Virus record (IMG/VR): IMGVR_UViG_3300042887_005053
Location: 124,001 to 188,000 of that record
Length of the DNA stretch: 64,000 bases
Reading direction: 5' to 3' (one strand)
The translations under genes were made by a program, and so were the position numbers. Below, piece by piece: positions 25,093-41,129 of this stretch; the first letter of the stretch is position 1, and each line of letters starts with the position of its first letter. The notes under the pieces were generated by a model. That model was given only the letters and a program-made list of their open reading frames with translations. It made no database searches and was not told the origin of the DNA.

Positions 25093-28000
25093 TTAAATAG
25101 TTGGTACGGTTATCTGTATGATTGGTTCAAACGGTAATATCTGATCACCTCTGTAGCCAGTGTATAGATCATTTAGTCCTCTTATTTCATAATTCTTTTT
25201 ACTAGTATAAATTTGACCATATCCATTATCGCTAGTCACTTCTATTGTAATGAAGGGATCAATATTCGAATCAACAGTGAAGTTATAAGAATGAGTTGCA
25301 TTACCCAACCGATATTCAGACAAAGTTTGAATCGGATAATAATCTATCTTTTTCCATTCTGTCATGTCAAACCAATATTTGATGTCATTTGAAATTACAT
25401 TCTGATAAGGTGTCACAGTTGATTGTGTTCCATATACCAAGAATGAAGACTGAGTGCCAATATATTGATAAATTAAAGAATCGTATAGAGCATATTGTCC
25501 TTGTTGATAGTCAAATTCTGCGTCCCATTTTGTTACAGTGTCATATCTTCTTGGATTTTTGATTCTGTTATTATCTATCACGGATTCGTATAGTTGTCCA
25601 TAATAAATTATTCTATCACCAGAATTGTAAGTAGTAAACGGATTCCACTCTTTGTGAGTCTGGTATGTTCTAACTTTTATTGTGTAGTAATCTGGACTAA
25701 AAGAACTTGTGGCTATAGTAAAATCAACATGGCAAGTATATACTGTACTTCCACTATTAACTGGCATCAAGTAAGCTTCATTCAGTTTGAAGTCAACAGG
25801 TGTCATACTTTGTCTCAAATTAAGAATTTTAGCGTCATAGTTTCTATGTGTTATTGTATCTACTCCAACAAAATCTGCTCTTCCGGTAATGTCTAAAATT
25901 TTATGAGTGATAGGAATTACTTTTCTCTGTAACCAATATTTAAGTCCTTGTAATTTAATTATGACTTCGCCTAACGAATATAATAAAACATTATTTCCTT
26001 CTTTGTCGGTAATTTTATAAGTTAGATTAAAAAGATTTGTATCTTCGAAATTTGGGTTAGGCATAGTGTGCTTAATAAAGTCATTAATTGTCCAACCTTC
26101 GACTGTATTATCGAATATATCCGGAATCTCAACCTTGAATAATTTGTAAAAGTCTGGTGAATTGACATTTATATTTCTATAATACTCGTACAACTCTAAA
26201 TCATTATATCCGAATAGATTGATTGCGTTGATAATCGCTTTGTAAGAACCAACATATGGAAATATATCACTTCTGACCATTAACATTTCTTTTCTCTTCT
26301 GATTCAAATATGTCCAATCAACACCTTGTTCATTGATATCATAAGGTTTAAAAATGTAGGCATCTTCTGGCCCTATATTGTGACCTGTGTTAGTCAGTTC
26401 AATTCTGTATCTTTCATCTTCTATTTCTGTCTGACCCATGACTCTAAATTCACCTATAGACTTATCTTGAACCTTGAATCTTACAGATAAGTATGTCGTT
26501 TTCCCAGTCGATGGGTAGTTAGTGATTGATGTGGTCTCATTAACAAATGAATCATAACTTCTGATAAAGTCTACTATTAGTTGTCTAGAACTTATTCTTC
26601 TTATTTTGAAAGTTTTACCATGATTAATTGAAGCATACTTTCTTTTTGAATTAGTATTGTCAGTTATGTAAATTCTTATAATCTGGCCTACTTTCAAACT
26701 TCTTGTTAAGTTATTATCATCAAATAAGAAGGTTGAGTTAGAATTGATATCTAATGAAATAATACCATAGTTTCCGTTTTTAGAGTCTTCGACTAATTTA
26801 AAGGTCAAGATATTATTATTTGTAGAAGATGTTGTAAATGTAAAATCTATTTCTTCTCTCTTGTACAAAATTAAATTAGATTGTGCGGGTCCTTCATTAT
26901 CCGATCGAAATCCTATGAATGTTTGTAAAGGTTCTGGTAAAAATGAAAGATTGTCACTTGAGTCGACATGATCTAATGTATAGATAATTTCATTGAATAT
27001 AGTTTGTTGAAACTCTGGCAACGAAACTCTTTCTATAACTTTATTTGGATTCTTATTCAAAACAATATTTGTAAGTGGTTTAGGTCCAGTATATGCGTAG
27101 GATCCAGTTATTGGTAGTTGTTCACCACTGAAATCGTATAAGAATATCTCTGGATGTTCATCAGTTCTCCATTTCCAAACATATTTAACATTTACCTCAT
27201 CGTTATAGTTTTCTCTTGGTTTTCTTATATACTCTCTCGTTTTTAACCAAAGATCTTCTCTCGGTTGATAGTTAGGATCCAGAGATCCAAATCCTTGTGA
27301 AATGTTAGAGTATGTAGGATTTTCTATAACTATTTCGGATTGAATAAACACACCAATTTCAACCACATTATTAACAGAAGGTTGTACTCCTATTATACTT
27401 TGTCTATCTGGGTTGTAAATAACTTTGTTTACAGTTTGATTAAAGTTTTGTGTATGTTTAACGGTACTTAAAATATTATCTATCACTAAAACTTTACCAT
27501 TCGTTTGATTTGCTAAATAAACATCACCATCAAATTGACTTAGTGTCATTGGTCCATAACTAGAAGTTACAACTGATGATACTAAATTATCATCTAAATT
27601 AATTGTTTGAACAATTGTTGTTTTACTAATAATTATATTACCTGAATAGTTATTGAAAATAAAATCCGTGAAGGAGTTATCTGTTGAAACTACTGAGATA
27701 TCAACAATAGTTCCATTCTTAATCTTCTTTAAATTTGTTGAATCAAAGTAATAAACCCAACTATTTATAGGTTCGTAAAACAAGACCGATGTTATTCCAA
27801 TTATTGTAACAGTTGAGTCGATGGCTCTGGTTACTCCATCAATTATAGTCAATAAGTCCTGTGAAGAAACAAAAAACTGTTTTTCAAAGTCATTATAAAC
27901 TAAGTCAATCACATTTCCAGTAATGGTTATCTGAGTAGTTTCTGTTGTTGTAATATTATCTTTATCCCAAACATAAAGTACAGAATCATTAACAAATTGA

Positions 28001-30789
28001 ACATAAATATCACCATTCGTCGTATTGATTGAAATTTGCTGAATTTGCTTCGATGATAGGCTAGTTGAATCAGCAATAGTCGCAATTATGTTGTCCGTAA
28101 GAGGATCTACAATTGTTACTTGTTCAGATCCGTAACAATAAAGATAACTATTAATAGGGTTATAAAGAGCCTCTATTGGATTTGTTATGTTAAGACTAAT
28201 AGTGTTTGTTGTTCTAAGAGTAACAGCATCTAAAACTGTTAAGTTGCCACCAAGTATATAAATACTAGCACTAAGTTGTAGATACAAAATATCTTTGATA
28301 TTGACATTGACTACACTTGTTGAAGTTGAGCTATAACTATTAACTGAAGCAAAGTTCAAACTAAAAGATGGTTCAAATTGATCAACTACGAATTCACCAG
28401 CATTTGACAAGGTCGGCGAGATGGGTGGGAGACAAGCAGTCGCTCCAAATCCTCCACTAAAAGCTAAACTAACAAACGGTGAAATCTCACAAATTGGATC
28501 TATGGTTCCCCAGAATGGACCTTGATAGCTCAATACCAAGCTCGTTGGATCGATATGTAAAAGATTATATTCTTGGTTATTGTACGGTTTGTTTGTGTTA
28601 TTTATAGTAACAACTTGACCGGTTGAGAAAGGAAAAGTTTCAAAACTATAAGTTGATCCACTTGTTTGTTTTGGTAATGCTATTTCATTAGAAACTAAAG
28701 TTGCTCCGAATTGTCCTTTTATTTTATTTACAATTTTATACTGAGGAACACCCGGTATATCTGTTTTACCGGTCTTTATTGTGTATTCGAGTCTTTGTGA
28801 CTGTTCTTTCACTCTGAAAACAAGCATAGCATTTATACTCACGACATAAATTCCGTAGTCTGATAATTCATCTTGATAGTCATCAATCCAATTTGATAAA
28901 GCAGTTGCTAAGTCTGGAACTCCATTTGTTATAGTTACTGTTTGACCATAGCTTCTGCCATTAATTATTATGTTTAAATAGTTGCTTGAATCAAAGAAAA
29001 TTATCTCAGAATGTTGGATGTAAAAGTCTGCAGTCGTACCTACTTCAACCGAAAACTCTAGTGGTACATTAGGGTATTGTGTTCTTAAACTTATTGAATT
29101 ATAGTAAAGATTGCTAGCAATGCCTACATATTGGAAAGCGTATTGTAGAGTTGGTATAACACCAAGTGATACTAATCTCGCATAATGTTTTGTTAGCCAG
29201 CTTCGAAGAGTTCTATCAATTGTTCTTGGTAGATTAGGAGATGTTCCTACATAGATCCAATCTATCTCTTGTTGATAGACTTGTCCATCGATCATTATTT
29301 TAAGTCCAAATTCATCTAAATCGGTAAATATAATATTGTAAACAAAGTTTGAGTTAATATCTTCATTTATTTCCGGTAAAAGAGTTTCTTCAATACCAAC
29401 AGTTTGTTCTAAAATATTCTTCTTATTTGCTAAATTTGGTTGATTAGTAAACTGACTATTTGTTATACCATAGAAGTTTATAATAGCATATTCACTAGGA
29501 TAAACTAAATCAGCATAAAGTGTTGGTTCTTCGTAGTATAAATCTATATTGAATAAACTTAAATCATCTTTATAGAACTCAGCCGCTGAGGCTAAAGTAG
29601 AAGCATTACTGTAAGTAAATCTTTGTTGATAGTATATTTTATTGGTTGTTAAGTAAATATTTGTTTGATAAACATTTTCTGTTGCTAATGTAGTGGTTAT
29701 TGGTAGAAATGATGGTTGTGACCAATAAGAAGCACTTCCAGGTGTTATAGAAGATGTAGCATTCCAGTAGTGTGCTTGAATACACTCATAAATATTACTT
29801 TCCCATATGACCTGTGATTGTGTTGCGTAGTAGACAAGATTTGAATTGCCTAAAAATTGTGGTATAGAGTCAACAACTAAAGCATTTGAATTTAATGAAG
29901 ACAGTTCAATTGCAAACTCAATACCTGGTTTAAGTACAAGAGGTATAGTGCCAGAAAAATTTAATCTATTTCCTGAAAGCTCTAAATCACCAAAATAAAC
30001 AGATGGTACCTCAGTTTTAAGTACCAATTCTATCAATAAGTCATTACTTTGTGTAAAATTGTCTTTATTAAGTTCATATCTATAATAATTTTTGTCAGAT
30101 AAATTAATATTATTAACAGTATATACTCCATCATTTTTCTGAGTGTTGAAAAGAGTTAGTTTTTTTCCGTTAAAATATTTTCCGTAGAAATCTGGTTCTG
30201 ACCAAGAAGATATATTTGAAATTGTACCAGTTGAGTAGTTATAGATGCCGATTGAATTTACACCACTTATTGTTTTATCAACATATGACGAGGATAAGCC
30301 TAATTGTGTGTTGTATGTGAGATTAAATTGTTTATTATCAAGTCCTGATATTATTAAAATAGCATCTTTCTTTGTCTGAACAACAGTGTAAGTAATATTT
30401 GAGTTTGAAAATTCAAAAAGTGTTTGATCAAAAGTAATTTGTGTTCCAACTGGGAACTTTGATTCAAAATCTTGACCATAAATCCACTTTGAGTAAAAAT
30501 TCTGATCATTATTAACTGCTTCAATAGATGCTATAGATTGTGTTTTATAGGAATTACCATATATATCGAATCGATATTCATTAAATAATTGAAACTTATC
30601 GAGCTTCAAAACACCTGGTAGTTGATATTCAAAAGAAGGAACTTTTTCAAAAGTATAAATGCCAATAGTTTTGAAGGTATCATTGCTATTTTCATGAAAG
30701 ATTAAATCTCCCTTCCATTGTTCTGTTTCCTGATCGTATCTGAAATTTAAATTATCTCCTTCTTTGTTGAAGAATAGTAGTGATTGCAT
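25093..30789 (-). CDS. Giant baseplate-wedge-like protein with beta-propeller and CBM5/12-like modules
   Basis: 1898 aa. C-terminal YVGSYKAIINAINLFGY resembles gp7-type wedge segments. Central YVTN-like blades (~27350-28300) and three W/Y..G..(I/V).Y...Y modules. Confidence 0.55.
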   Translation of the reverse strand: MQSLLFFNKEGDNLNFRYDQETEQWKGDLIFHENSNDTFKTIGIYTFEKVPSFEYQLPGVLKLDKFQLFNEYRFDIYGNSYKTQSIASIEAVNNDQNFYSKWIYGQDFESKFPVGTQITFDQTLFEFSNSNITYTVVQTKKDAILIISGLDNKQFNLTYNTQLGLSSSYVDKTISGVNSIGIYNYSTGTISNISSWSEPDFYGKYFNGKKLTLFNTQKNDGVYTVNNINLSDKNYYRYELNKDNFTQSNDLLIELVLKTEVPSVYFGDLELSGNRLNFSGTIPLVLKPGIEFAIELSSLNSNALVVDSIPQFLGNSNLVYYATQSQVIWESNIYECIQAHYWNATSSITPGSASYWSQPSFLPITTTLATENVYQTNIYLTTNKIYYQQRFTYSNASTLASAAEFYKDDLSLFNIDLYYEEPTLYADLVYPSEYAIINFYGITNSQFTNQPNLANKKNILEQTVGIEETLLPEINEDINSNFVYNIIFTDLDEFGLKIMIDGQVYQQEIDWIYVGTSPNLPRTIDRTLRSWLTKHYARLVSLGVIPTLQYAFQYVGIASNLYYNSISLRTQYPNVPLEFSVEVGTTADFYIQHSEIIFFDSSNYLNIIINGRSYGQTVTITNGVPDLATALSNWIDDYQDELSDYGIYVVSINAMLVFRVKEQSQRLEYTIKTGKTDIPGVPQYKIVNKIKGQFGATLVSNEIALPKQTSGSTYSFETFPFSTGQVVTINNTNKPYNNQEYNLLHIDPTSLVLSYQGPFWGTIDPICEISPFVSLAFSGGFGATACLPPISPTLSNAGEFVVDQFEPSFSLNFASVNSYSSTSTSVVNVNIKDILYLQLSASIYILGGNLTVLDAVTLRTTNTISLNITNPIEALYNPINSYLYCYGSEQVTIVDPLTDNIIATIADSTSLSSKQIQQISINTTNGDIYVQFVNDSVLYVWDKDNITTTETTQITITGNVIDLVYNDFEKQFFVSSQDLLTIIDGVTRAIDSTVTIIGITSVLFYEPINSWVYYFDSTNLKKIKNGTIVDISVVSTDNSFTDFIFNNYSGNIIISKTTIVQTINLDDNLVSSVVTSSYGPMTLSQFDGDVYLANQTNGKVLVIDNILSTVKHTQNFNQTVNKVIYNPDRQSIIGVQPSVNNVVEIGVFIQSEIVIENPTYSNISQGFGSLDPNYQPREDLWLKTREYIRKPRENYNDEVNVKYVWKWRTDEHPEIFLYDFSGEQLPITGSYAYTGPKPLTNIVLNKNPNKVIERVSLPEFQQTIFNEIIYTLDHVDSSDNLSFLPEPLQTFIGFRSDNEGPAQSNLILYKREEIDFTFTTSSTNNNILTFKLVEDSKNGNYGIISLDINSNSTFLFDDNNLTRSLKVGQIIRIYITDNTNSKRKYASINHGKTFKIRRISSRQLIVDFIRSYDSFVNETTSITNYPSTGKTTYLSVRFKVQDKSIGEFRVMGQTEIEDERYRIELTNTGHNIGPEDAYIFKPYDINEQGVDWTYLNQKRKEMLMVRSDIFPYVGSYKAIINAINLFGYNDLELYEYYRNINVNSPDFYKLFKVEIPDIFDNTVEGWTINDFIKHTMPNPNFEDTNLFNLTYKITDKEGNNVLLYSLGEVIIKLQGLKYWLQRKVIPITHKILDITGRADFVGVDTITHRNYDAKILNLRQSMTPVDFKLNEAYLMPVNSGSTVYTCHVDFTIATSSFSPDYYTIKVRTYQTHKEWNPFTTYNSGDRIIYYGQLYESVIDNNRIKNPRRYDTVTKWDAEFDYQQGQYALYDSLIYQYIGTQSSFLVYGTQSTVTPYQNVISNDIKYWFDMTEWKKIDYYPIQTLSEYRLGNATHSYNFTVDSNIDPFITIEVTSDNGYGQIYTSKKNYEIRGLNDLYTGYRGDQILPFEPIIQITVPTI

Positions 30790-30810: not shown

Positions 30811-30861
30811 TATATATTAAATTAGAGATAGCTACTATTAATAAATTAATTTTAATATATA
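30811..30861. promoter_or_regulatory. Divergent late-type promoter pair
   Basis: tatatatta at 30811-30819 (- strand, for 30789) and TAATATATA at 30853-30861 (+ strand). The latter overlaps the track's ATG, so the true start is probably 30867. Confidence 0.65.
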
Positions 30862-30866
30862 TGTTT

Positions 30867-32237
30867 ATGACTAAAATATCAAATTATTCACAATTTATAA
30901 CAGAAGCATTTCTAAATAAAACACAAGAAAAAGCTATTGACACTATTCTACAATACCTTAAAAAGAAAATAGGTGTTGATTTTTATTCATATGAAGAAAT
31001 ATGGAACATTCAAAAAAGTGACGAGTTTCTTAAAGGTCAACTTTTTTTAACTCTATCATCAAATAAAGCAATTAGATTTAACTGGATCGAAAGAGACATA
31101 TCAAGTGAGATACATTCAATAGATCTATGGACTGATTTTGAATTTGATTCTAATCCTGACTTCACTTTACTATTAAATGAACTTTCGGTTGTTAAGGCTT
31201 TGCCTCATGTAGTAGACTTTTATAAAAATCCAGAAATAATAGTAAAAACAAGTAAGAAAGATGTAGTATTTGAAGATTTAGAAATCGAGGATACTGATCC
31301 AAGAAAAAGACTTGAAGATGAAAGAAAAAAACTATCAAGATTAAGAAGTCCTGAGAAAATTGAACTTCAGAAAAGAAAAATAGAAAGAATAGAAGCAATT
31401 GTTGCACAAACTGAAAACTCTTCTATTGAAAGTGAAAAAATAAATCAACTTGATGATGAAATGAAAATTGATGTTTTTAAATCAATCGAACTTTATACTA
31501 CTCAAGTTGCAAGAGGCAAGTCAAACTCATTGATTATATCTGGTGATTCGGGTGTTGGAAAGACCCAAACCGTGAAAGATACCTTAACTTCACTTGGTAT
31601 GAGAAAAGATGATGATTATTATTTTGCAACTGGTACTGCAACAACAGCTGGTTTATATGAATTACTATTTAAGAACCGAAACAAACTAATTGTATTTGAT
31701 GACTGTGATTCGGTATTAAAAGATCCAGAATCGGTCAATATATTAAAAGGAGCACTTGATACCTATGATGTTAGAGAAATATCTAAATTATCGAAAGGTA
31801 ATACTTTTGATTCATCTGGATTAAGTGATGAAGAAGTTGATGTCCAGTTTAGCGAGACTGGTAAGTTTCCAAATAAATTCGATTTTACTGGACAAGTAAT
31901 ATTTATATCGAACTTACCAGAAAATAAATTTGATAAAGCACTATTATCGAGAAGTTTACATGTTGATGTGCATTTAGATAGACAAGAATTATTCGAAAGA
32001 ATGAAGTCTATAATGACAAGAATATCTCCAGATGTAGATTTTGAGAAGAAACTGGAGGCATTAGAATATTTAACTTTTATATGTAACACTTATCCAACTA
32101 AGTTTGATCTTAATATCAGAACATTAATACATTCAATCAATTTGAGAGCTCATAATGAAGAAATGATTAAGATTGGTGACAAAGAAGAACAAGTTTGGAA
32201 AGTTTTAATTAAAAAATATTTGGTTAAGTCAAGATGA
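30867..32237 (+). CDS. AAA+ ATPase with targeting-like N-terminus
   Basis: Walker A GDSGVGKT, Walker B IVFDDCD, sensor-1 FISN, ALLSRS arginine finger. Starts MTKISNYSQFITEA and has a coiled-coil linker. Confidence 0.85.
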   Translation: MTKISNYSQFITEAFLNKTQEKAIDTILQYLKKKIGVDFYSYEEIWNIQKSDEFLKGQLFLTLSSNKAIRFNWIERDISSEIHSIDLWTDFEFDSNPDFTLLLNELSVVKALPHVVDFYKNPEIIVKTSKKDVVFEDLEIEDTDPRKRLEDERKKLSRLRSPEKIELQKRKIERIEAIVAQTENSSIESEKINQLDDEMKIDVFKSIELYTTQVARGKSNSLIISGDSGVGKTQTVKDTLTSLGMRKDDDYYFATGTATTAGLYELLFKNRNKLIVFDDCDSVLKDPESVNILKGALDTYDVREISKLSKGNTFDSSGLSDEEVDVQFSETGKFPNKFDFTGQVIFISNLPENKFDKALLSRSLHVDVHLDRQELFERMKSIMTRISPDVDFEKKLEALEYLTFICNTYPTKFDLNIRTLIHSINLRAHNEEMIKIGDKEEQVWKVLIKKYLVKSR

Positions 32238-32812
32238 AACATTTAGAACTATTTGAATCATTCACTCTTATTAGTGAGAATCTGAAATATCATGTTGATA
32301 ATAATATTCCGGTTTTAGAGAATGTGTTTAGACCACATTCAAAAGCTTTTTATGATTTGATAAAAGAAGCAAGAAATCTATTTGATGGTGGTAAAATTGG
32401 TGTATCAGAACATGATAAACATTTATTTGAAACAACCGATTTAGGTTACTTTGATATATTTGAGAATGAAGTAGTACCACTTGATTTACCGATTGAAGTT
32501 GTTGAGGAAGTAAATGAGGCTGAGTATCACGGAAAAGAAGTTGAATTAAATAAACCAATTAGAAGTTCTGGTCCTAAAAAATATAAAGTTTATGTCAGGA
32601 ATCCTAAAACTAAAAAAGTTATATGTGTTAATTTCGGGGATGTGAAAGGTGGACTAACTGCTAAAGTAAGTGATCCAGATGCTCGTAGAAGTTTTGCTGC
32701 TCGTCATCAATGTCACCTAAAGAAAGATAAGACAAAGCCTGGTTACTGGGCCTGTCGTGCGAATAGATACGCTAATTTGTGGGGTGGTAAAACATATCCC
32801 GGATACTGGTAA
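32234..32812 (+). CDS. Conserved T4-like phage protein (EAEYHG...NFG...SFAARHQC...YWAC domain)
   Basis: 192 aa starting MKHLELFESF. The C-terminal domain resembles a small protein common in cyanophage-like T4 relatives. ATGA overlap with the ATPase stop. Confidence 0.7.
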   Translation: MKHLELFESFTLISENLKYHVDNNIPVLENVFRPHSKAFYDLIKEARNLFDGGKIGVSEHDKHLFETTDLGYFDIFENEVVPLDLPIEVVEEVNEAEYHGKEVELNKPIRSSGPKKYKVYVRNPKTKKVICVNFGDVKGGLTAKVSDPDARRSFAARHQCHLKKDKTKPGYWACRANRYANLWGGKTYPGYW

Positions 32813-32826
32813 AAATATATAGAACT

Positions 32827-33735
32827 ATGAAATACTTAAATACCTACAAATTATTTGAATCAGAAGAAGTAGTAAGCAACGAAGAAGTTACTGAACTAAT
32901 TGAAGAGTGTAAAGACATTGTTGAGACATTCAATGAGTCAGAAGATACTTTTAAAGTAGCTAATTATGAAACGGGATTTGTTGCATATGACTCTTATTTG
33001 AAAAGAATAAGAAGTGGTGACTTTGACTCGAGACAGTCACATGAATCTGATATGGCTGCTATTAAATTTAATCTTGGTTTATCAAGTGATTTGAGTAACG
33101 GATATTTTAGAGATAACGAAGAAAGTGTTACTACAGAAAAAATAGACGGATTAATTGAACTATTGAGTAAATCGAAGATACTAGTTCAGAGATTGTCGAG
33201 ATATTGTACTACAATTTATTATAAAATGACAGGTAACTCAATTAGATTCATTTTAATATTCAAAAATCCAGATGAGGGTAGTAGTAAGGCAGCAAAAGTT
33301 ACAAGATTATATAACAAGCTATCAAAAGATTTTAAAGATTATGACATGTGGAAAACTATGAATTTGGTTCAACTTAATCAAAGATCAAATGATAGAATTC
33401 CAGAAAAATATAGAGAGTTATATAGTTTACTTAAAACTAATCCTAATCTAATTGATGGTAGATATGGTCAATGGGATGAAACAAGAAGAAGTAATTTACA
33501 GTTAAGATTTTCTTGTTCTGAAACATTTGATGGTAATACAATTATTGTTAATGTCACTGGATTCAAATACAAAACATATATGATGGATAGATTCAAATCA
33601 ATTAGATTATCTAATGAAGAGAAAGTAGAAGCAATGAAATGCATCGAACAGAAAGTTAAAAATAGTTTAAGAAGTGATGCCGATTCAATTGAAACTTCAA
33701 TTGAAGGAAATCAGATAAAAATTAAGGTGAAATAA
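32827..33735 (+). CDS. Hypothetical protein with targeting-like N-terminus
   Basis: 302 aa starting MKYLNTYKLFES. AAATATATA at 32813-32821. Confidence 0.75.
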   Translation: MKYLNTYKLFESEEVVSNEEVTELIEECKDIVETFNESEDTFKVANYETGFVAYDSYLKRIRSGDFDSRQSHESDMAAIKFNLGLSSDLSNGYFRDNEESVTTEKIDGLIELLSKSKILVQRLSRYCTTIYYKMTGNSIRFILIFKNPDEGSSKAAKVTRLYNKLSKDFKDYDMWKTMNLVQLNQRSNDRIPEKYRELYSLLKTNPNLIDGRYGQWDETRRSNLQLRFSCSETFDGNTIIVNVTGFKYKTYMMDRFKSIRLSNEEKVEAMKCIEQKVKNSLRSDADSIETSIEGNQIKIKVK

Positions 33736-33974
33736 TGAAATACTTAAAGAAGTTTGAAGGATTTTCTAACAGAACTTGTGATAGATGTGGCGAGCGAACT
33801 AATACAATGAGTATGTCCTGGTTAAACACAGATGAGTGTTGTATGAATTGTTTAGAAATTGAAAAAGGAGAACCAGATTATATTTTGGCTAAAGAAATAG
33901 AATCCGAAGAAGTTAGAAAAGGTAATCTAAACTATAAAGGTATAAGAAATGAAGATAAACTGACACCGAGATAG
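33735..33974 (+). CDS. Small Zn-finger protein (CxxC...CCxxC)
   Basis: 79 aa, MKYLKKFEGF then CDRC...SMSWLNTDECCMNC...GNLNYKGI. TAATG coupling with the upstream gene. Confidence 0.7.
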   Translation: MKYLKKFEGFSNRTCDRCGERTNTMSMSWLNTDECCMNCLEIEKGEPDYILAKEIESEEVRKGNLNYKGIRNEDKLTPR

Positions 33975-34002
33975 AGAAGACTATATTATTAATATATAAT
34001 TT

Positions 34003-35124
34003 ATGAATTTAGAAATAATTTATAAAAAAATATGTCAAAGAGGTCAAATAAGAGTATTAGATAGATCCATCTATACAGAAAAACATCATATTATTCCGAG
34101 ATGTATGGGAGGTAACAACAATAAGGAAAATATAACTAAATTAACCGCTAAAGAACATTTTATCTGCCATAAAATTCTATGTAAAATTTATCCATCCAAC
34201 GAAAAGTTAAGATATGCCTTTTGGGCAATGTGTAATCAAAAAGTAAATAGAGATTATGTGGTTTCTAGTAGAGATTATGAATATGCTAAAACAATTTGTT
34301 TAGAAATGTGGAGAAGACCAAAATCCCCCGAATCCATAAAAAAAGGAGCAGATAAAAAAAGAGGCATAAAGGTAAATTATTTTATTTACCCAAAACGGAT
34401 ACAAGATGGTAATTCTAATCACAATCACGGTAAAAAGTGGATAACTAATATTTTAACAAGTGAATCAAAAATGATATTTGGTGATATTCCAGATGGATGG
34501 AAAATAGGAAGATCAAAAGTTGGCAGTTTGTGCAAACCAAATTCAAAAGGTAGAAATTGGTATCATAATCCAGAAACAAATGAAGAAAAATACTTCAATT
34601 TTTCCGATAATCCACCAGGATGGATTAAGGGTAGATCTAAAAATAAAAAAATTGGAGGAGATAATCTCTCCGGTAAGATTTGTTATTTCAACAAATCACT
34701 AAATAAAGAGAAATATTTTAAAGATGATGATATAATACCAGATGGGTGGATCAAGGGTAAGTTAAAAAAAAGAATTTGGTTTTATAATCTTGAATTAAAT
34801 ATGGAAAAATTATTCACTGAAGATTCCGCAGATGTTGGTTTTATTCGAGGTAGATTACCTAAATTACCATTTAGTGAAGAAATGAAAGAAACAAATGAAT
34901 TTATAAGAATTTTTAAAAGAGACATAGATGAAAAATCACTTGTTTGGCATAGAGATAGAGAAGATAGAATTATTGAGTCGATTGGTGAAACTGATTGGAT
35001 GATACAATTAGATAATGAACTGCCAAAGTCGTTAAATCAAAAAGTGTTCATTCCAAAAGGAGTTTATCATAGAGTTATAAAAGGAACTAATAATTTGAAA
35101 ATAAAATTAATTAAATTAGTTTAA
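34003..35124 (+). mobile_element. HNH homing endonuclease fused in frame to a C-terminal cupin-like phage protein
   Basis: EKHHIIPRCMGG...NITKLTAKEHFICHKIL HNH motif, four W(x)N...(P/V)xGWxxG(R/K)-type DNA-binding repeats, then LPFSEE...LVWHRDREDR...FIPKGVYHRVIKG cupin-like domain. Own TAATATATA at 33990. Confidence 0.8.
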
Positions 35125-35134
35125 TATATAGAGT

Positions 35135-35716
35135 ATGAAACATTTGAAATTATTTGAAGAATTTATTGATTTCAACTTAGATTGGGTATCAGCCAAAATG
35201 AATGAACTATCAGATTTGGTATCTGATTTTTCAAATATTGAGTTTAAATATCATATTGAAAAAGTCAAGGATAATGAAGATTTACAGGGTCTTTTAGTTA
35301 TAGAACTTACAGCGACTGATGCGAACATAACTCTTATATGGACTATTGATTTAGACTCTCCATCAATTACTATTGAAGAAATTGAAGGTGATGAACATGA
35401 AAATATTTATGATTCAAAACTTGAAAGTATTGAACAAGCTCTTGATTTAGTTGAGAAAAATATACAAGATTTATTTGATATTAATGAGAGAGTCAAGGCT
35501 CAAAGATATAAAGGAAAAAAAATACCTGGTAAATACTTAGCTGGACCACATCCTGGAAAAATGAAGAAGGAAATTGATAAGTATAGAGGTAAAAGTGAAT
35601 ATAAAAAAGAATGGGATGCTGATTATACTACTGGAAAAGGTGGTAAAGGTAAAAGAGTAAAAACTAAGAAATCATCAGCCACAAAAGCTTACCAAAAAAT
35701 GTTTGGTGATAAATAA
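35135..35716 (+). CDS. Two-part protein: acidic N-terminal domain with targeting motif plus basic C-terminal domain
   Basis: 193 aa starting MKHLKLFEEF. After DINERV the sequence becomes Lys-rich (IPGKYL...KTKKSSATKAYQKMFG). Confidence 0.7.
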   Translation: MKHLKLFEEFIDFNLDWVSAKMNELSDLVSDFSNIEFKYHIEKVKDNEDLQGLLVIELTATDANITLIWTIDLDSPSITIEEIEGDEHENIYDSKLESIEQALDLVEKNIQDLFDINERVKAQRYKGKKIPGKYLAGPHPGKMKKEIDKYRGKSEYKKEWDADYTTGKGGKGKRVKTKKSSATKAYQKMFGDK

Positions 35717-35727
35717 AAATATATTTC

Positions 35728-36288
35728 ATGGAAATTAAGAAATTTATTCGTCAAGAAAAAACTACAAATGTAGAAAAACCACAAACAAGTGGAACAGTAA
35801 TCACTCCTTCAAAGTTGACTGAAGAAACCATTTCAATTTTGACTGAAAGAATAAAAGATGAGTATACTGCTCACTATTTCTATAGATCAGCTGCTAACTG
35901 GTGTCGTAACATGAACTATAAAAAAGCATCACAATTCTTTGATAATGAATCAAGTTCAGAATTAGAACATGCTAAAGGATTACAAGAGTATATGGATGAC
36001 TTTAATGTTCAACCACATATTCTACAAACAGAAACAAACTTTGAGTTTGATTCATTAGTTGATATTATAAATGGTGCATATCAAATGGAACATTCGTTGA
36101 TGAATTCATATAATCAAAGTTCATCAGCATTATTTACTACTGACTTAACTACATTTGATTTCTTAGCTAATTATAGAACAATTCAAAAAGAAGCTGTAAT
36201 TGAGTATTCTGATTTATTGAATGCATTAATGTTAGTAAATCATACTGATAAGTTTCAGGTTCTTTATTTTGAACAAACATATTTTTAA
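35728..36288 (+). CDS. ftn: Phage-encoded non-heme ferritin (FtnA-like)
   Basis: 186 aa. By-eye alignment with E. coli FtnA: DEYTAHYFY..AANWC, ASQFF..E..SELEHA, AYQMEH, DLTTFDFLANY..IQKE, LYF. Ferroxidase residues equivalent to E17/Y24/E50/H53/E94/Q127 are present. Confidence 0.85.
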   Translation: MEIKKFIRQEKTTNVEKPQTSGTVITPSKLTEETISILTERIKDEYTAHYFYRSAANWCRNMNYKKASQFFDNESSSELEHAKGLQEYMDDFNVQPHILQTETNFEFDSLVDIINGAYQMEHSLMNSYNQSSSALFTTDLTTFDFLANYRTIQKEAVIEYSDLLNALMLVNHTDKFQVLYFEQTYF

Positions 36289-36292
36289 TACA

Positions 36293-36553
36293 GTGAAATA
36301 CTTAAAGAAATTTGAAGCATATACATTCGAGGACTTTACTCTCAGTGATATTGAAGATGTTAAAGATTTGTTAGAATATGGTTTGCCTATTGAACAAATT
36401 GCGATAGAATTAGACTTTACGGTCGATAAAGTGAAACAAATAGTTCACTCTATTGAAAAGAATAAAAAAACGACTACAAAAGGATGTGGTTGTTGTTCAG
36501 ATTGTACCGGTGAAGTGGATTGTGAATGTGGTTGTGTTGAGTGTGAATGCTAA
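36293..36553 (+). CDS. HTH-like domain plus metallothionein-like Cys-rich tail
   Basis: GTG start gives MKYLKKFEAY. LPIEQIAIELDFTVDKVKQIV looks like an HTH. The last 22 aa contain 9 Cys (CGCCSDCTGEVDCECGCVECEC). Confidence 0.7.
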   Translation: MKYLKKFEAYTFEDFTLSDIEDVKDLLEYGLPIEQIAIELDFTVDKVKQIVHSIEKNKKTTTKGCGCCSDCTGEVDCECGCVECEC

Positions 36554-36589
36554 AAATTAGTTACTATAAACTATAAATAAAATTATTAT

Positions 36590-36961
36590 ATGGAAAAATT
36601 AATGACATTCGAATCTTTCTCTGATGAAATAGATTATGAAAACTACTACTATTTAGTAGAAGATATATTACTACTTGAAGAAGTAACAGCTGGGTCAGTT
36701 GATACTGCTGGGTCAAAAGCATCAAAGATGATAAAAAAGAAATCAGAACAAAGTGGTATTCCTGTTGGAATTCTTAAAAAGGTTTATAAGCGAGGGCAAG
36801 CTGCTTGGAATGCTGGTCATCGTCCAGGTACACCACAACAAGCTTGGGCTACTGGTAGGGTAAATAGTTTTATAACTGGTGCTGGTGGAGCTAGAAAAGC
36901 TGACAATGACTTATGGGCAAAAGCTAAAGCTGCTAAAGCTAGAAAAAAGAAGAAAAAATAA
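36590..36961 (+). CDS. Conserved T4-like phage protein (DUF5824-like)
   Basis: 123 aa starting MEKLMTFESF. KKSEQSGIPVGILKKVYKRGQAAWNAGHRPGTPQQAWATGRVNSFI resembles a conserved cyanophage-type family. Confidence 0.65.
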   Translation: MEKLMTFESFSDEIDYENYYYLVEDILLLEEVTAGSVDTAGSKASKMIKKKSEQSGIPVGILKKVYKRGQAAWNAGHRPGTPQQAWATGRVNSFITGAGGARKADNDLWAKAKAAKARKKKKK

Positions 36962-37425
36962 TGAAATACTTAAAAAGATTTAATGAAAATTTAGATAATA
37001 ATTCTTATAAAATTCATATACCCGAAAAATATTCAGGGGTTAGAATGGAATTTGGGGAATTTGCCTCACCACAAGACATAATTGATACGTACAATCAGAT
37101 AGTAGAAGAAGGAGTTCCTTTGGTAAGTTATTCCGAGGATGGGTTCTTCACTAATGAAGATGATGAAGAAATTGAAGAGTTTATAATTCTTGATGAATTG
37201 AATTATGCTATTGTTGGTGAAGAAGAAGATAATATGGGAGATTTACCAAAACAAAAAAGATTTGGTGATGGTAATGAAAATGAAATCTATTTAACCAATA
37301 ATGTAAGATTCCACCGTAAAGGGAATGAGTTAACTTTAAGTTACACCCCAACTAAAATTGGAGGGGGACTTAGAATATCTGATGAACAGAAGAATATGTT
37401 AATTGATTTTTTAACCAAGAATTAA
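36961..37425 (+). CDS. Hypothetical protein with targeting motif, possibly frameshift-truncated (extension to 37510)
   Basis: 154 aa starting MKYLKRFNEN. A +1 frame continues protein-like sequence to a TAA at 37508-37510 that abuts the terminator. Confidence 0.65.
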   Translation: MKYLKRFNENLDNNSYKIHIPEKYSGVRMEFGEFASPQDIIDTYNQIVEEGVPLVSYSEDGFFTNEDDEEIEEFIILDELNYAIVGEEEDNMGDLPKQKRFGDGNENEIYLTNNVRFHRKGNELTLSYTPTKIGGGLRISDEQKNMLIDFLTKN

Positions 37426-37541: not shown

Positions 37542-38675
37542 TTATTCGGATAGCCCTTTATAGTTATCATCATATATCTTTACAACCTCATTAAATTCTT
37601 GTAAGACACCATTTTTAATTTTATCTGACTCGTACTTACTTCCATTTATATATTCTCGAATCATTTCTGTATACTCTAATTGTATAGTTGGAATAACTCC
37701 TTCATCAAATTCATCGGTACTAAGTTCTTCGGTAATTATTTCTCCGTTTTCAGCTTTTTGTAATACAATATCGTCTAAATACTCAACAGAAGCAAAGTTT
37801 CCTTGTTCAAGCATAGCTTCTAATTTTCTTCTTAGTTTTCTGTTATTTATTAACAAAGAATTGGAAATAAATAGATCAATATAGTCCTTTGTTGAAACTG
37901 AATCTAACGAAAGAATATCATCTTCTGACTTTAGATATACTTTCTTGAATTTCGGTGAAACATTATTTGGAATAAATCTTTCTGTATTTTCAATCACATC
38001 TAAAATAAAAATTCCTTTTTGATTTCCTAAATCATTTCTATCCATTTCAAAAAGATTACCAACAAAAGTAAAATTTTTATTTACTTGTTTAAGATGAATA
38101 TGTCCACTGTATACTGATCTATATCCACTAAATTCTTCAACATCAATTTTGTCGTGGTTCTTATGTGCAACTGATGTTAAATGCATTTTAGCTCCATTTA
38201 GATCTGAGTGACAAAATAGATAATCACAACCACTAAATTGTTTTAGTATTTCAATTTGATTTTTTCTTTTCTCTACCCAGGGTAACATAAGAATAGACTT
38301 TCCCATAAAATCTATTTTAGTTGGTTCTTCATACACGGTAACACCTGGAATATATTTATAGAGTTTAACTGTATTTACATCATTGGTAGCCTTTGTATAT
38401 AAATCATGATTTCCAATAATGATGTGAACTTGACAAATTTTGGCTATTTCCTCTAAAAGATTCTGAGCATAATTAAGAATATTGATGGGTATTACTGACC
38501 TATTGTCAAATAAGTCACCAAGATGTACAATAATATCATCTTTAGTTAATTCTTTTCTAAGAAGTGGTAGAAGAAAATCGTTGAAGTATTCTTGATGAAC
38601 TTTGAACCACTTATCGACAGAGTTAGGGTAGCCAAGTCCTAAGTGGGTATCACCAACCAGTAATATTTTAGACAT
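37542..38675 (-). CDS. gp47: Mre11/SbcD-like recombination nuclease subunit (T4 gp47)
   Basis: Metallophosphoesterase motifs GDTHLG, HLGDLFD, IGNHD, FCHSD, SGHIH. Confidence 0.9.
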   Translation of the reverse strand: MSKILLVGDTHLGLGYPNSVDKWFKVHQEYFNDFLLPLLRKELTKDDIIVHLGDLFDNRSVIPINILNYAQNLLEEIAKICQVHIIIGNHDLYTKATNDVNTVKLYKYIPGVTVYEEPTKIDFMGKSILMLPWVEKRKNQIEILKQFSGCDYLFCHSDLNGAKMHLTSVAHKNHDKIDVEEFSGYRSVYSGHIHLKQVNKNFTFVGNLFEMDRNDLGNQKGIFILDVIENTERFIPNNVSPKFKKVYLKSEDDILSLDSVSTKDYIDLFISNSLLINNRKLRRKLEAMLEQGNFASVEYLDDIVLQKAENGEIITEELSTDEFDEGVIPTIQLEYTEMIREYINGSKYESDKIKNGVLQEFNEVVKIYDDNYKGLSE

Positions 38676-39566: not shown

Positions 39567-41129
39567 ATGACGAATTCCGATTTAAACAAAGACACTAGAT
39601 GGATAGAAAAAAACTATCCATCTTTTTTTTGTGATATTAGTAACTACACTAGTATAGATATTCCTTGGAAAGAAAAATATTTTTGGAGTGTTAATGGAAT
39701 CAAGGATAAACCTAAATGTACAATCTGTGATAATGAACTAAAATTTTTGTCTATAAAAAAGGGTTATACTAAATTCTGTTCTAGAAAATGCACGGCCATT
39801 GGCACTATCGATAAGAAAAAAAATACTTGTATTCAAAAATATGGTGTTGATAATCCAATGAAATCCGAGATGATAAAGGATAAGTTTGATAAACTAATAA
39901 CTGAAAAGTATGGTGTATCAAACATCTCAAAATTATTAGACACAAAGGATAAAAAGAAAAATACTATGTTGTTGAATTATGGTGTTGAGTATAATTCACA
40001 AAGAGATGAGGTTAAGAGTTTACTTTCAGAAAAAATGGTTCAAAAGTCAAGTGAAATGAACTATAAAAGATCACTTCAAATATTTGAAAATCTTAATAAA
40101 AAAATAGAAATGTTTGATATTAAATTAGTATCAGTCAAATCATCTAATTATCAGTTTGAATGTTTTAATTGTGGTGAAGTTTTTGCCATACATAAAAACA
40201 CTCTTAATGATAGAATACGAAATCAAAACACAATTTGTACAATATGTAATAAAATTGACAACACATCTAATTCACAGGAGATAATTTTGGATTTTATTAA
40301 ATCGATTTATAACGGTCCTATAAAATCAAATGATAGACATTTAGGATTTGAGTTAGATATATATTTACCAGAGTTAAAAATAGCATTTGAATATAACGGT
40401 GTGTACTGGCATTCAGATGAATTCAAAGATAAAAAATATCATTTTAACAAGACTAAAATGTGTAGTGAGAATGGTATAAAACTAATTCATATTTGGGAAG
40501 ATTTCTTCATATCAAAGAGAAATATAGTTTTGTCAAGAATATCTAATCTTCTTGGAAACAGTAAAAGAGTTCACGGAAGAAATTGTAAAGTTTCATTTAT
40601 TAGTAATGACGAGTATGTAAAGTTTATAGAAGAAAACCATCTACAGGGTTATGTAGTATCAAAATACAGAATAGGAATTTATTACAATAATGATTTATAC
40701 GGTGTTATGTCTTTTGGTGGTCTTAGAAAAGCACTCGGTCAAAAAAGTGAGAGTGGAACTTATGAGTTATTGAGGTTTTGTAACAAAAATGGATATACTA
40801 TTGTTGGTGGAGCATCTAAGATGTTGAATTTTTTTATTAAGAATATTTGTCCAAATAAAATAATTAGTTATGCTGATAAATCTTGGTCATCCGGTAGTAT
40901 TTATTATAGGTTAGGTTTTAGATTTGATTCTGAGACTGCTCCTAATTATTATTACATAAAAAATGGAGTTAGATACAACAGATTTTCCTTTAGAAAAGAT
41001 ATTTTAGTTAGAAATGGAGAAAACAGTTCTTTGTCTGAGTCTGAGATTATGAGAAAGAATAAATATTACAAAATATATGACTCTGGTAATTACAAATTTA
41101 TTTGGGAAAATAAAAATCCAATCATTTGA
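39567..41129 (+). mobile_element. Free-standing Hef-like homing endonuclease
   Basis: 520 aa. CxxC...CSxKC knuckle, KYGV repeats, CxxC..CxxC, ELDIYLPELKIAFEYNGVYWHS PD-(D/E)XK-like core, then NHLQG...YELLRFC...DSG C-terminal domain. Paralog of 49043..50740. Confidence 0.75.

What the first reader, a model, noticed from the sequence alone, without database searches (positions are those of the whole stretch)
33735..36553. Metal-handling cassette in the putative cargo cluster: ferritin + HTH-metallothionein + Zn finger + cupin
Seen: within 2.8 kb lie a CxxC/CCxxC protein, a cupin-like domain (WHRDRED...YHRVIKG), a ferritin, and directly after it a protein ending in 9 Cys in 22 residues. The ferritin, Zn-finger and Cys-tail proteins all carry the targeting-like N-terminus and the late promoter context. 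Known: ferritins store and detoxify Fe(II), and metallothioneins chelate Zn/Cu/Cd through Cys clusters. Inference: a phage metal-buffering module that may be packaged and injected, protecting DNA from Fenton chemistry or supplying or sequestering metals early in infection.
Basis: partly seen in the sequence, partly recalled or inferred. Interest (0 to 1): 0.75.

Follow-up and report, generated by a model that had tools for sequence, protein, structure and literature searches.

The report
Phage ferritin in a gene-shuffling locus
A fragment of a very large lake-water phage carries a real, apparently active ferritin with an unusual outward-pointing N-terminal arm, but the zinc-finger, cupin and cysteine-tail genes beside it are separate, independently shuffled genes, not one metal-handling cassette.

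Summary
All four sequence features exist. The "cassette" reading does not hold.

- **Ferritin (35728-36288):** it is genuine. All six di-iron ferroxidase residues are invariant in its family. It belongs to a clade found only on phage-like contigs (147 IMG/VR contigs, over 1000 metagenome proteins). Every member inspected has a 25-45-residue N-terminal arm, here a conserved tip (MEIKKF) on a variable linker.
- **Cys tail (36482-36550):** it is not a chance run. It is a copy of a rare 22-residue, 8-9-Cys mini-domain (GCGCCxxCxGExDCEC...). That module sits on at least four different carrier proteins in related phages. Here the carrier is a three-helix HTH.
- **Cupin:** it is a true minimal cupin from a large family of 86-90-aa proteins. 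Here it is fused in frame behind an invading HNH homing endonuclease.
- **Zn ribbon:** it is an unrelated small protein.
- **Co-occurrence:** among 80 ferritin loci, none has the Cys9 module, the HTH or the Zn ribbon within 5 kb, and 5 have the cupin. Lake populations include variants that lack exactly the ferritin gene or the HNH.
- **Residual link:** short CxCxCxxC-motif genes lie one or two genes upstream of ferritin in two other lineages.
- **Packaging:** the CTS-like leader remains untested.

The parts
32234..32812 (+). p192: 192-aa protein of a virus-only family (phrog_7595 domain), starting with the leader MKHLELFESF. This is context. Its relatives carry the Cys motif at their N-terminus and often lie directly upstream of ferritin.
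32814..32821 (+). Promoter-like motif AATATATA, 13 nt before the p302 start. It probably drives p302 and the Zn-finger gene.
33735..33974 (+). 79-aa C4 zinc-ribbon protein (CxxC-x17-CxxC) with the leader MKYLKKFEGF. Its start overlaps the stop of the upstream gene.
   Evidence: (phrog_27033, 1.1e-14); none of the 80 ferritin loci has it
33991..33998 (+). Promoter-like motif, 12 nt before the HNH start.
34003..34863 (+). HNH homing endonuclease: catalytic part at about aa 1-194, then three GW[IK][KI]G[RK] repeats. It is fused in frame to the cupin gene. It is a mobile insertion that is absent in a population variant.
   Evidence: phrog_655, 4.7e-39; P0202 has the same junction; joint 33954->34954
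34864..35124 (+). Minimal cupin domain. Invariant residues are W-H-R-D-x-E-x-R and G-x-x-H-R. The native start codon is lost to the HNH fusion.
35123..35130 (+). Promoter-like motif, 12 nt before the p193 start. It probably drives p193, the ferritin and the HTH-Cys gene.
35135..35716 (+). p193: protein of unknown function with the leader MKHLKLFEEF and a basic C-terminus. It lies directly upstream of ferritin in the nearest relatives.
35728..35814 (+). Ferritin N-terminal arm (aa 1-29). The tip MEIKKF is conserved and the linker varies in length and sequence.
35815..36288 (+). Ferritin domain with the ferroxidase residues E45, Y52, E78, H81, E121 and Q153, and an invariant C-terminus.
36293..36328 (+). 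Leader (V)KYLKKFEAYTF of the HTH-Cys protein, with a GTG start. It is nearly invariant in homologues but modelled as disordered.
36341..36475 (+). Three-helix HTH module of the NarL/GerE, resolvase or sigma-region-4 type. Elsewhere it is common as a 60-aa protein or fused to DUF5824 or to the KIHIP domain.
36482..36553 (+). Cys9 module GCGCCSDCTGEVDCECGCVECEC plus the stop codon. It is a recurrent mini-domain.
36590..36961 (+). DUF5824 protein with the leader MEKLMTFESF. This is context. In relatives it follows ferritin directly or carries the HTH or the Cys module.
36961..37425 (+). KIHIP-domain protein with the leader MKYLKRFNEN. This is context. In relatives it is fused to the HTH module.

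Best explanation
The 2.8-kb stretch is not one functional unit. It is part of a fast-shuffling block of small genes (window 32.2-37.4 kb). The block lies in a 204-kb fragment of a very large lake-water phage, probably about 0.5-0.6 Mb, whose host is probably a member of the Bacteroidota.

Shown:
1. One gene is a true ferritin of a clade found only on phage-like contigs. It has a complete H-chain-type di-iron centre.
2. The Cys tail is one copy of a rare, conserved 8-9-Cys mini-domain. This module is attached to different carrier proteins in related phages.
3. The cupin is a separate, widespread small phage protein, invaded here by an HNH homing endonuclease.
4. The Zn ribbon is unrelated to the other three.
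5. The ferritin and the HNH are present or absent as single units in natural populations.

Inferred mechanism:
- The ferritin is transcribed with p193 from the TTAATATATA promoter at 35123. That promoter type also precedes tail-fibre genes, so expression is probably middle or late.
- The protein assembles into a 24-subunit cage, oxidises Fe(II) at the E45/Y52/E78/H81/E121/Q153 centre and stores the iron. This lowers free Fe(II) and Fenton damage in the infected cell while a very large genome is replicated and packaged.
- On a ferritin cage the N-termini point outwards. The arm would therefore give 24 flexible tethers, each ending in MEIKKF, which probably dock the cage to an unknown partner.
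- The Cys module most likely folds around two Zn ions as a small knuckle, not as a metal buffer. Gly, Glu and Asp are invariant as well as Cys.
For: **Ferritin**
- PF00210 scores 63 bits. Solved bacterial ferritins match at 1e-13 to 1e-9 over residues 30-174.
- The six ferroxidase residues are invariant in a 37-sequence alignment.
- All 120 nearest homologues listed have an N-terminal extension. In the closest group this is MEI[KR]KF plus a Q/P-rich linker of variable length.
- The eleven contexts inspected are phage-like.
- 147 IMG/VR contigs carry the clade. Only 2 MAG contigs among 185,579 species genomes do, and both look like phage.
- N-terminal fusions on H. pylori ferritin appear among the solved structures matched (5u1b, 8w3g).

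**Not a cassette**
- Population joints are: 35721->36294 removes exactly the ferritin, and 33954->34954 removes the HNH.

**Cys module**
- phmmer of the 30-aa tail against 1.84e9 proteins finds only P0121 and P0313. P0313 has two copies.
- A DNA pattern scan finds 10 viral loci with two further architectures.

**HTH**
- AF2 gives three helices at pLDDT about 87-90, with nearest folds NarL, LiaR and resolvase.

**Cupin**
-.

**Promoter**
- 62 of 218 genes carry the motif, a 24-fold enrichment, and tail-fibre genes are among them.

**Host and genome size**
- A Por_Secre_tail domain occurs on relatives' contigs. TAnnTTTG-type 8-mers are enriched upstream of genes.
- SbcD is nearest to uncultured phages of 634-642 kb. 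CheckV completeness is 35%.
- The record also carries Hsp70, CarA/CarB and GlnA-like genes. Cellular-type genes acting in the infected cell are therefore already present in this record.
Against: - There is no expression or protein evidence. No RNA run was listed.
- Cage assembly, ferroxidase activity and metal binding by the Cys module are inferred from sequence only. The Zn co-folding job was not run by the tool.
- The third iron site of bacterial Ftn is missing (S77, A156). The protein is far below the NCBIfam equivalog cut-off, 40.7 against 178 bits, so its activity could differ.
- The partner of the N-terminal arm is unknown.
- Cys-motif genes lie beside ferritin in three different architectures (window/L008; L088/93/94; L089-91). 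Ferritin, p192 and the cupin share one conserved block in some 26-35% GC phages. Some functional coupling is therefore not excluded.
- The shared leader, a late-type promoter and a position next to structural genes also fit virion packaging.
Confidence: 0.62

Rival explanations
1. The four genes form one metal-buffering module. Its products are targeted into the capsid by the shared N-terminus and injected with the DNA to control metals early in infection.
For: - A shared leader sits on the Zn finger and the Cys-tail protein, and a related tip sits on the ferritin.
- A late-type promoter motif is shared with tail-fibre genes.
- T-even phages use a conserved capsid targeting sequence on otherwise diverse internal proteins (PMC3012670).
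Against: - The genes are not co-conserved, and the ferritin and the HNH are individually dispensable.
- The Zn ribbon and the cupin are not metal-handling families.
- A 24-mer ferritin cage of about 12 nm could not pass through a phage tail folded (established knowledge; inference).
- The leader core is on 29 of 218 ORFs, including proteins of 300-470 aa. That is many for packaged cargo.
- No T4-type protease or capsid gene was found, but the record is incomplete.
Confidence: 0.08
2. The ferritin alone is capsid cargo. The arm docks the cage, or its subunits, to the scaffold or shell. The phage head then holds an iron-scavenging ferritin that protects about 0.5 Mb of packed DNA, much as encapsulins hold ferritin-like cargo and Dps protects nucleoids. 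It is not injected.
For: - The arm has a conserved tip and a variable linker in the closest group, and lineage-specific conserved arms elsewhere in the clade.
- The arm would point outwards on a cage (established knowledge of ferritin; N-terminal fusion structures).
- The ferritin lies next to tail sheath and tube genes in L022 and near the tail tube here.
- The promoter is of the late type.
Against: - There is no proteomic evidence.
- The arm tips differ between lineages without any shown co-variation with head proteins.
- The record's other cellular-type genes (Hsp70, CarAB, GlnA) suggest ordinary action inside the cell.
- Known encapsulin targeting peptides are mostly C-terminal and unlike MEIKKF (from my own knowledge).
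Confidence: 0.15
3. The ferritin and the Cys motif work together. The Cys module or motif, on the HTH, on p192 or on a 74-aa protein, acts as a metal or redox partner of the ferritin. It might be an iron chaperone or release factor, an Fe-S site, or a metal-sensing switch on a DNA-binding protein that reports iron status.
For: - All 6 of 1321 neighbour genes with CxCxCxxC or CxCCxxC lie at position -1 or -2 of the ferritin. The window and L008 have the module at +1. That is three different carrier proteins.
- The HTH-Cys gene starts 4 nt after the ferritin stop.
Against: - The six cases are only 2-3 independent lineages.
- Three of them are N-termini of p192, which may be linked to ferritin only by a shared locus.
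- The full module occurs in 10 loci where no ferritin was found in the stretch held.
- 72 of the 80 ferritin loci have no Cys-motif gene nearby.
- The nearest ferritin relatives (73% identity) have no Cys gene.
Confidence: 0.18
4. The shared N-terminus is not a targeting signal. It reflects translation-start constraints in a Bacteroidota host without Shine-Dalgarno use (A/U-rich, unstructured first codons, near-leaderless mRNAs). It also serves as a recombination site for module shuffling.
For: - The promoter motif ends only about 5 nt before many start codons, and overlaps the ATG at 30861.
- All leader codons are A/U-rich.
- One population joint links one MKYL leader to another, 32840->36957.
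- Modules are fused and split at the leaders in relatives.
Against: - Synonymous sites vary while the peptide is kept.
- Residue order, not only composition, is conserved. It is enriched 8-fold over internal windows and nearly invariant in 57 homologues.
- The joint has only 31 letters on its shorter side.
Confidence: 0.3

Closest known systems
Bacterial non-haem ferritin (H. pylori Pfr, E. coli FtnA; PF00210)
   Same: Both have the ferritin domain and the ferroxidase residues E17, Y24, E50, H53, E94 and Q127.
   Different: - There are 28-29 extra N-terminal residues with a conserved tip.
- The FtnA third-site residues are missing. E130 is Ala, as in animal H chains.
- The C-terminus DKFQVLYFEQTYF is invariant.
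- The score is far below the NCBIfam equivalog cut-off.
- The clade is seen only on phage-like contigs.
Virus-encoded ferritin noted as an auxiliary metabolic gene (NCLDV, PMC7136201; one myxophage preprint, 10.64898/2026.09.14.751636)
   Same: A virus carries an iron-storage gene. It is proposed to regulate iron availability or oxidative stress during infection.
   Different: Those reports only list the gene. Neither passage read mentions an N-terminal arm, a phage-wide clade or its gene neighbourhood. No match to this ferritin was found in 50,697 deposited phage records.
T-even internal proteins with a capsid targeting sequence, in a hyperplastic locus
   Same: Unrelated small late proteins share a ~10-residue N-terminal leader. 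The T4 leader is MKTYQEFIAE (from my own knowledge). Here the leader is MK[YH]LKxFE, and one protein starts MIKYFQEFILE. The locus varies between relatives (PMC3012670).
   Different: No virion data exist. No T4-type prohead protease or capsid gene was found in the record. The cleavage motif is not established. The leader is far more common here (29 of 218 ORFs).
Encapsulin ferritin-like cargo, and the plant ferritin extension peptide
   Same: A ferritin-fold protein carries a short terminal peptide on a flexible linker. In those systems the peptide directs or regulates the cage (established knowledge).
   Different: Encapsulin cargo peptides are usually C-terminal and have another sequence. 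The plant extension peptide lies on the cage surface. No homology to either was tested or seen.
Metallothionein, and the DnaJ-type CxxCxGxG zinc knuckle
   Same: The tail is 39% Cys, with CxC, CC and CxxC spacings and no aromatic residue or His. It contains one CxxCxG unit.
   Different: No Pfam family of any kind matches at E <= 10. Gly, Glu and Asp are invariant, as in a folded knuckle. It occurs as a 22-residue module inside larger proteins.
Minimal single-domain cupins (2i45, 3d82, 4e2g)
   Same: It has the double-stranded beta-helix fold, a P-x-G-x-x-H second motif and a His/Asp/Glu first motif.
   Different: It is only about 87 aa. The first motif is WHRDxED, not HxH. No Pfam cupin model matches. 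Here it is fused to a homing endonuclease.

Membership tests
Ferritin (PF00210, maxi-ferritin) | Ferritin-like four-helix-bundle domain above the family threshold | tested here: met
   63.2 bits against a cut-off of 24.5. There are 43 solved ferritins at E <= 0.01.
Ferritin (PF00210, maxi-ferritin) | Di-iron ferroxidase centre (FtnA E17, Y24, E50, H53, E94, Q127) | tested here: met
   E45, Y52, E78, H81, E121 and Q153 are aligned and invariant in 37 sequences.
Ferritin (PF00210, maxi-ferritin) | Bacterial Ftn third iron site (E49, E126, E129, E130), and equivalog-level similarity to FtnA | tested here: not met
   The aligned residues are S77, I152, a variable E155 and A156. NF007638 scores 40.7 bits against a cut-off of 178.
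Ferritin (PF00210, maxi-ferritin) | 24-subunit cage and iron mineralisation | not testable with these tools
This needs SEC or EM and iron assays.
Metallothionein | Cys at about 30% or more in CxC, CC and CxxC patterns, with no aromatic residues | tested here: met
   9 Cys in 23 residues, with no aromatic residue or His.
Metallothionein | Match to a described metallothionein family | tested here: not met
   No Pfam family of any kind matches the 30-aa tail at E <= 10. No NCBIfam match for the whole HTH-Cys protein.
Metallothionein | Binds several metal ions in thiolate clusters | not testable with these tools
   The Zn co-folding job was not folded by the tool.
Cupin superfamily | Double-stranded beta-helix fold | tested here: met
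   AF2 pLDDT 93.4 with seven strands. Foldseek matches cupins 2i45, 3d82, 2opk and 4e2g and AFDB cupin clusters.
Cupin superfamily | The two cupin sequence motifs with metal ligands | tested here: inconclusive
   Motif 2, P-x-G-x-x-H, is present and invariant. Motif 1 is WHRDxED, not HxH...E. No Pfam cupin model hits.
HNH homing endonuclease | HNH nuclease domain and presence/absence polymorphism at one site | tested here: met
   phrog_655 at 4.7e-39; the Pfam HNH match is only weak, at 0.058. A population contig joins 33954 to 34954 without the HNH. Stand-alone cupin genes are the rule.
Helix-turn-helix DNA-binding domain | Tri-helical HTH fold | tested here: met
   AF2 helices at 17-28, 33-39 and 44-61. 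The best folds are NarL, LiaR, DosR and resolvase DNA-binding domains, but at E 0.17-1. Pfam HTH_7 at 0.004 is below its cut-off.
T4-type capsid-targeted internal proteins | Shared N-terminal leader on otherwise unrelated small proteins | tested here: met
   The leader is modelled as disordered although nearly invariant.
T4-type capsid-targeted internal proteins | Prohead protease and a matching cleavage site after the leader | tested here: inconclusive
   No PF03420 match, but its control search rang nowhere and the record is 35% complete. Some leaders have L-F-E and others do not.
T4-type capsid-targeted internal proteins | Proteins present inside virions | not testable with these tools
   Needs virion proteomics.

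The most novel reading that the evidence does not exclude
The short N-terminal leader is a capsid-targeting signal of a huge-phage lineage. It takes the form M-x-[IL]-K-x-F, and is MEIKKF on the ferritin. Through it the phage would load a ferritin cage into its head, making the head an iron-scavenging compartment that shields about 0.5 Mb of DNA, in the way encapsulins hold ferritin-like cargo. It would also load a changing set of HTH, zinc-module and basic proteins. The 8-9-Cys module would then be a new metal-binding mini-domain that works with the ferritin.
Probability: 0.12. Interest if true: 0.85.

Novelty: new variant of a known kind. Interest (0 to 1): 0.5.

Why it matters
Ferritin genes have been listed in giant viruses and, in passing, in one phage study. 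A large ferritin clade found only on phage-like contigs has not been described in the literature I could search. Its catalytic centre is intact and every member inspected has an outward-pointing N-terminal arm.

If the arm docks the cage to a phage structure or a host target, that would be a new way for a virus to place iron storage. The arm would also be a natural counterpart of engineered N-terminal display on ferritin nanoparticles.

The Cys module is a compact, rare, mobile metal-binding candidate. The locus itself looks like a counterpart, in a huge phage, of the T-even internal-protein region. It would let one test whether huge phages use leader-directed protein packaging.

Tried and rejected
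- **T4 late promoter TATAAATA.** It occurs 22 times in the window with no tie to gene starts. It is replaced here by TTAATATATA.
- **'Ferrojan horse' idea** (ferritin feeds iron to HxH tail-fibre sites). No ORF in the record has more than one HxH. Rejected.
- **Iron demand from phage enzymes.** No class I RNR small subunit and no radical SAM enzyme in the record. The record is incomplete, so this is weak.
- **RiPP-precursor reading of the Cys tail.** No radical SAM maturase. The module is internal in other carriers. Rejected.
- **Tail as a chance product of TG-rich DNA or a frameshift.** The DNA is 75% T+G, and in L008 the next frame runs on into a DUF5824 linker. However, the same peptide module recurs with different codons and carriers. 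Rejected.
- **Head genes and protease.** PF03420, PF07068 and PF05065 gave no match. The controls for two of these rang nowhere, so the result is uninformative.
- **Ferritin in deposited phage genomes.** No tblastn match. megablast of the region also found nothing.
- **Exact tail pattern CECGCVECEC in IMG/VR.** No match. The looser module pattern gave 10 loci.
- **Zn co-folding of the tail.** The tool did not fold it. This is no evidence either way.
- **RNA runs.** None was listed.
- **p193 and p192.** Atlas and Pfam searches gave no function.
- **DksA/TraR reading of the Zn ribbon.** The CxxC-x17-CxxC spacing fits, but no Pfam family of any kind hit at E <= 10. Not adopted.

Full report
**What is there.** Between 33735 and 36553 the + strand holds five ORFs.
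- A 79-aa protein starts MKYLKKFEGF and has Cys at 15, 18, 35, 36 and 39.
- A 373-aa ORF spans 34003-35124.
- A 193-aa protein of unknown function, called p193 here, spans 35135-35716.
- A 186-aa ferritin spans 35728-36288.
- A small protein ends in GCGCCSDCTGEVDCECGCVECEC.

Homologues of the last protein begin MKYLKTFE. Its start is therefore the GTG at 36293, 4 nt after the ferritin stop, and not the TTG at 36269 that the ORF list gives.

**The genome.**
- The window lies in a 204,336-bp, 30% GC virus record that CheckV rates 35% complete.
- Its SbcD is closest to uncultured phages of 642, 634, 636 and 462 kb, at 31-50% identity.
- Its DNA is found in lake and freshwater metagenomes.
- Relatives' contigs encode Por_Secre_tail proteins.
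- 8-mers fitting TAnnTTTG (TATATTTG, ATATTTGT) are enriched upstream of genes. One copy lies upstream of the gene at window 58702. From my own knowledge this resembles the -7 promoter element of the Bacteroidota.
- The record also encodes Hsp70, both subunits of carbamoyl-phosphate synthase and a glutamine synthetase-like protein.

I read it as a fragment of a huge phage of a freshwater Bacteroidota host.

**The ferritin.**
- Pfam Ferritin scores 63 bits against a cut-off of 24.5. Solved bacterial ferritins match residues 30-174 at 1e-13 to 1e-9.
- In the alignment to H. pylori ferritin, E45, Y52, E78, H81, E121 and Q153 take the places of E17, Y24, E50, H53, E94 and Q127. All six are invariant in 37 family members.
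- The third iron site of bacterial Ftn is not kept. E130 is Ala, as in animal H chains. The protein is far below the NCBIfam FtnA equivalog cut-off.
- The word-index search gave 1082 relatives. IMG/VR has 147 contigs, many of 100-385 kb.
- 50,697 deposited phage records gave no match.
- 185,579 species genomes gave only two MAG contigs, and both look like phage. One has the ferritin right after tail sheath and tube genes.
- The eleven contexts I inspected are phage-like.

**The N-terminal arm.** Relative to cellular ferritins, every one of the 120 nearest members has 25-45 extra N-terminal residues.
- In the closest group the first six residues are MEI[KR]KF. A Q/P-rich linker of very variable length follows.
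- Other groups have other conserved tips.
- On ferritin cages the N-terminus lies outside. That is why antigens are fused there, and such fusions are among the PDB matches.
- The arm would therefore be an outward tether. This is inference.

**The Cys tail.**
- Nine Cys in 23 residues cannot be chance in a proteome with 0.85% Cys.
- Only one other 90%-identical protein (P0121, locus L008) has the same tail on the same carrier.
- phmmer of the tail against 1.84 billion representatives found, besides P0121, only P0313. P0313 starts MKYLKLFENF and carries two copies of GCGCCxxCxGExDCEC.
- A degenerate DNA pattern found the module in ten IMG/VR loci, in two further architectures. One is leader, acidic linker, module, DUF5824. 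The other is leader, acidic linker, module, p192 domain.
- The tail is thus a rare, mobile mini-domain. Gly, Glu and Asp are invariant as well as Cys. That suggests a folded two-zinc knuckle more than a plastic metallothionein (inference). No Pfam family of any kind matches.

**The carrier of the tail.**
- The carrier is a three-helix HTH. AF2 gives pLDDT about 87-90 for residues 17-61, and the nearest folds are NarL, LiaR and resolvase.
- Elsewhere the same module is common as a 60-aa protein. It is also found fused to DUF5824, or to the domain of the window's ORF at 36961-37425.
- Its first 12 residues are nearly invariant yet modelled as disordered.

**The cupin and the Zn ribbon.**
- The last ~87 residues of the 373-aa ORF belong to a family of over 666 stand-alone proteins of 86-90 aa, 66-82% identical to it.
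- Cultured relatives occur in Flavobacterium phage vB_FspM_immuto, Methylophilales phage Melnitz and Tenacibaculum phage pT24.
- The AF2 model (pLDDT 93) matches minimal cupins.
- The first ~194 residues are an HNH homing endonuclease. It has replaced the cupin's own start codon. P0202 shows the same junction.
- A lake contig joins 33954 to 34954 without the HNH.
- The Zn ribbon matches phrog_27033 and a few uncultured or gut phages. It is near ferritin in no other locus.

**Is it a cassette?**
- In the nearest ferritin relatives (73% identity) the order is p193, ferritin, DUF5824, KIHIP. No Cys gene, Zn finger or cupin is present.
- Counts within 5 kb of ferritin in 80 loci are: Cys9 module 0, HTH 0, Zn finger 0, cupin 5, p192 9, p193 2.
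- No ferritin was found in the stretches held for the ten Cys-module loci.
- In related lake populations one contig joins 35721 to 36294, removing exactly the ferritin. Another joins 35721 to 36803. Another joins the leader of p302 to the leader of the KIHIP gene, 32840->36957.

**Two caveats.**
- In some 26-35% GC phages, ferritin, p192 and the cupin lie in one conserved block.
- All six neighbour genes that carry a short CxCxCxxC motif, out of 1321, lie one or two genes upstream of ferritin. With the window this makes three carrier types in perhaps three or four lineages. A functional link between ferritin and the Cys motif is therefore possible but unproven.

**Leader and promoter.**
- The core [ILV][KR]x[FY] occurs in residues 2-9 of 29 of 218 ORFs, against 3.5 +/- 1.8 in internal windows. 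The ferritin is among the 29.
- Synonymous sites vary, so the constraint is on the peptide.
- TTAATATATA is enriched 24-fold upstream of genes, including tail-fibre genes. Copies lie at 32814, 33991 and 35123.
- p193, the ferritin and the HTH-Cys gene therefore probably form one late-type transcript (inference).
- The picture resembles the T-even internal-protein locus. There, diverse proteins share only a capsid targeting sequence (PMC3012670).
- No head genes or protease could be found in this partial record. No virion data exist.

**Verdict.**
- The interpretation as one packaged metal-buffering cassette is not supported.
- What remains of interest is a ferritin clade seen only in phages with an outward N-terminal arm, a new mobile Cys mini-domain, and a leader-bearing, shuffling locus in a huge phage.
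- Virus-encoded ferritin as such is already noted. I therefore rate it a new variant of a known kind.

Noticed in passing
window 34003-35124: An HNH homing endonuclease is fused in frame to the N-terminus of a conserved small cupin gene, whose own start codon is lost. The same junction is seen in metagenome protein P0202. A lake population has the HNH-free form.
   Followed up: yes
window-wide, e.g. 30854, 32814, 33991, 35123, 38854: The promoter-like motif TTAATATATA lies upstream of 62 of 218 genes, a 24-fold enrichment. It falls in two spacing classes: about 12 nt before the ATG, or overlapping it (small genes and HNH genes, near-leaderless), and about 29-33 nt before it (large structural-type genes).
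   Followed up: partly
window 55117-55692 (-): A 191-aa protein begins MIKYFQEFILE, close to the T4 capsid targeting sequence MKTYQEFIAE (recalled from memory). The next gene (55694-58501, 935 aa) begins MRYLKHRQEF.
   Followed up: no
window 32840 and 36957: A lake metagenome contig (run X8) joins the MKYL leader of p302 to the MKYL leader of the KIHIP gene and skips 4116 bases. This looks like recombination between leader-coding sequences. The shorter side is only 31 letters.
   Followed up: partly
window 39567-41129 (+) and 49043-50740 (-): Two further large homing-endonuclease-like genes (phrog_3339, about 1e-113 to 1e-116) lie next to the tail tube gene and to a 2207-aa ORF. The region is rich in mobile endonucleases.
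   Followed up: no
window 25093-30789 (-), 42374-48997 (-), 50838-55061 (-): Very large ORFs of 1898, 2207 and 1407 aa. The 1898-aa ORF has no PHROG match. The other two were not searched.
   Followed up: no
G000:C1:6089-7972, 62286-66097, 197373-198461 (outside the window): The same virus record encodes Hsp70/DnaK (6.8e-254), both carbamoyl-phosphate synthase subunits and a glutamine synthetase-like protein.
   Followed up: partly
whole record; window 37542-38675 (-): CheckV completeness is 35%. SbcD is nearest to uncultured phages of 634-642 kb (LR756502, LR745206). The window is probably from a phage of about 0.5-0.6 Mb.
   Followed up: partly
L008:406-1063: In the only other carrier of the HTH-Cys gene, the DNA after the stop runs straight into a DUF5824 linker (GVTAGSVDAAGS) in another frame. 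It then stops and meets a reverse-strand 155-aa gene. The DUF5824 gene there seems disrupted.
   Followed up: partly
L005:9452-10741: A 429-aa protein near the ferritin of a 172-kb relative ends in a run of DnaJ-like CxxCxGxG zinc-finger repeats.
   Followed up: no
window 36590-37425; proteins P0122-P0190: The HTH module, DUF5824 and the KIHIP domain are separate genes here, each with its own leader. In relatives they occur as HTH-DUF5824 and HTH-KIHIP fusions.
   Followed up: yes
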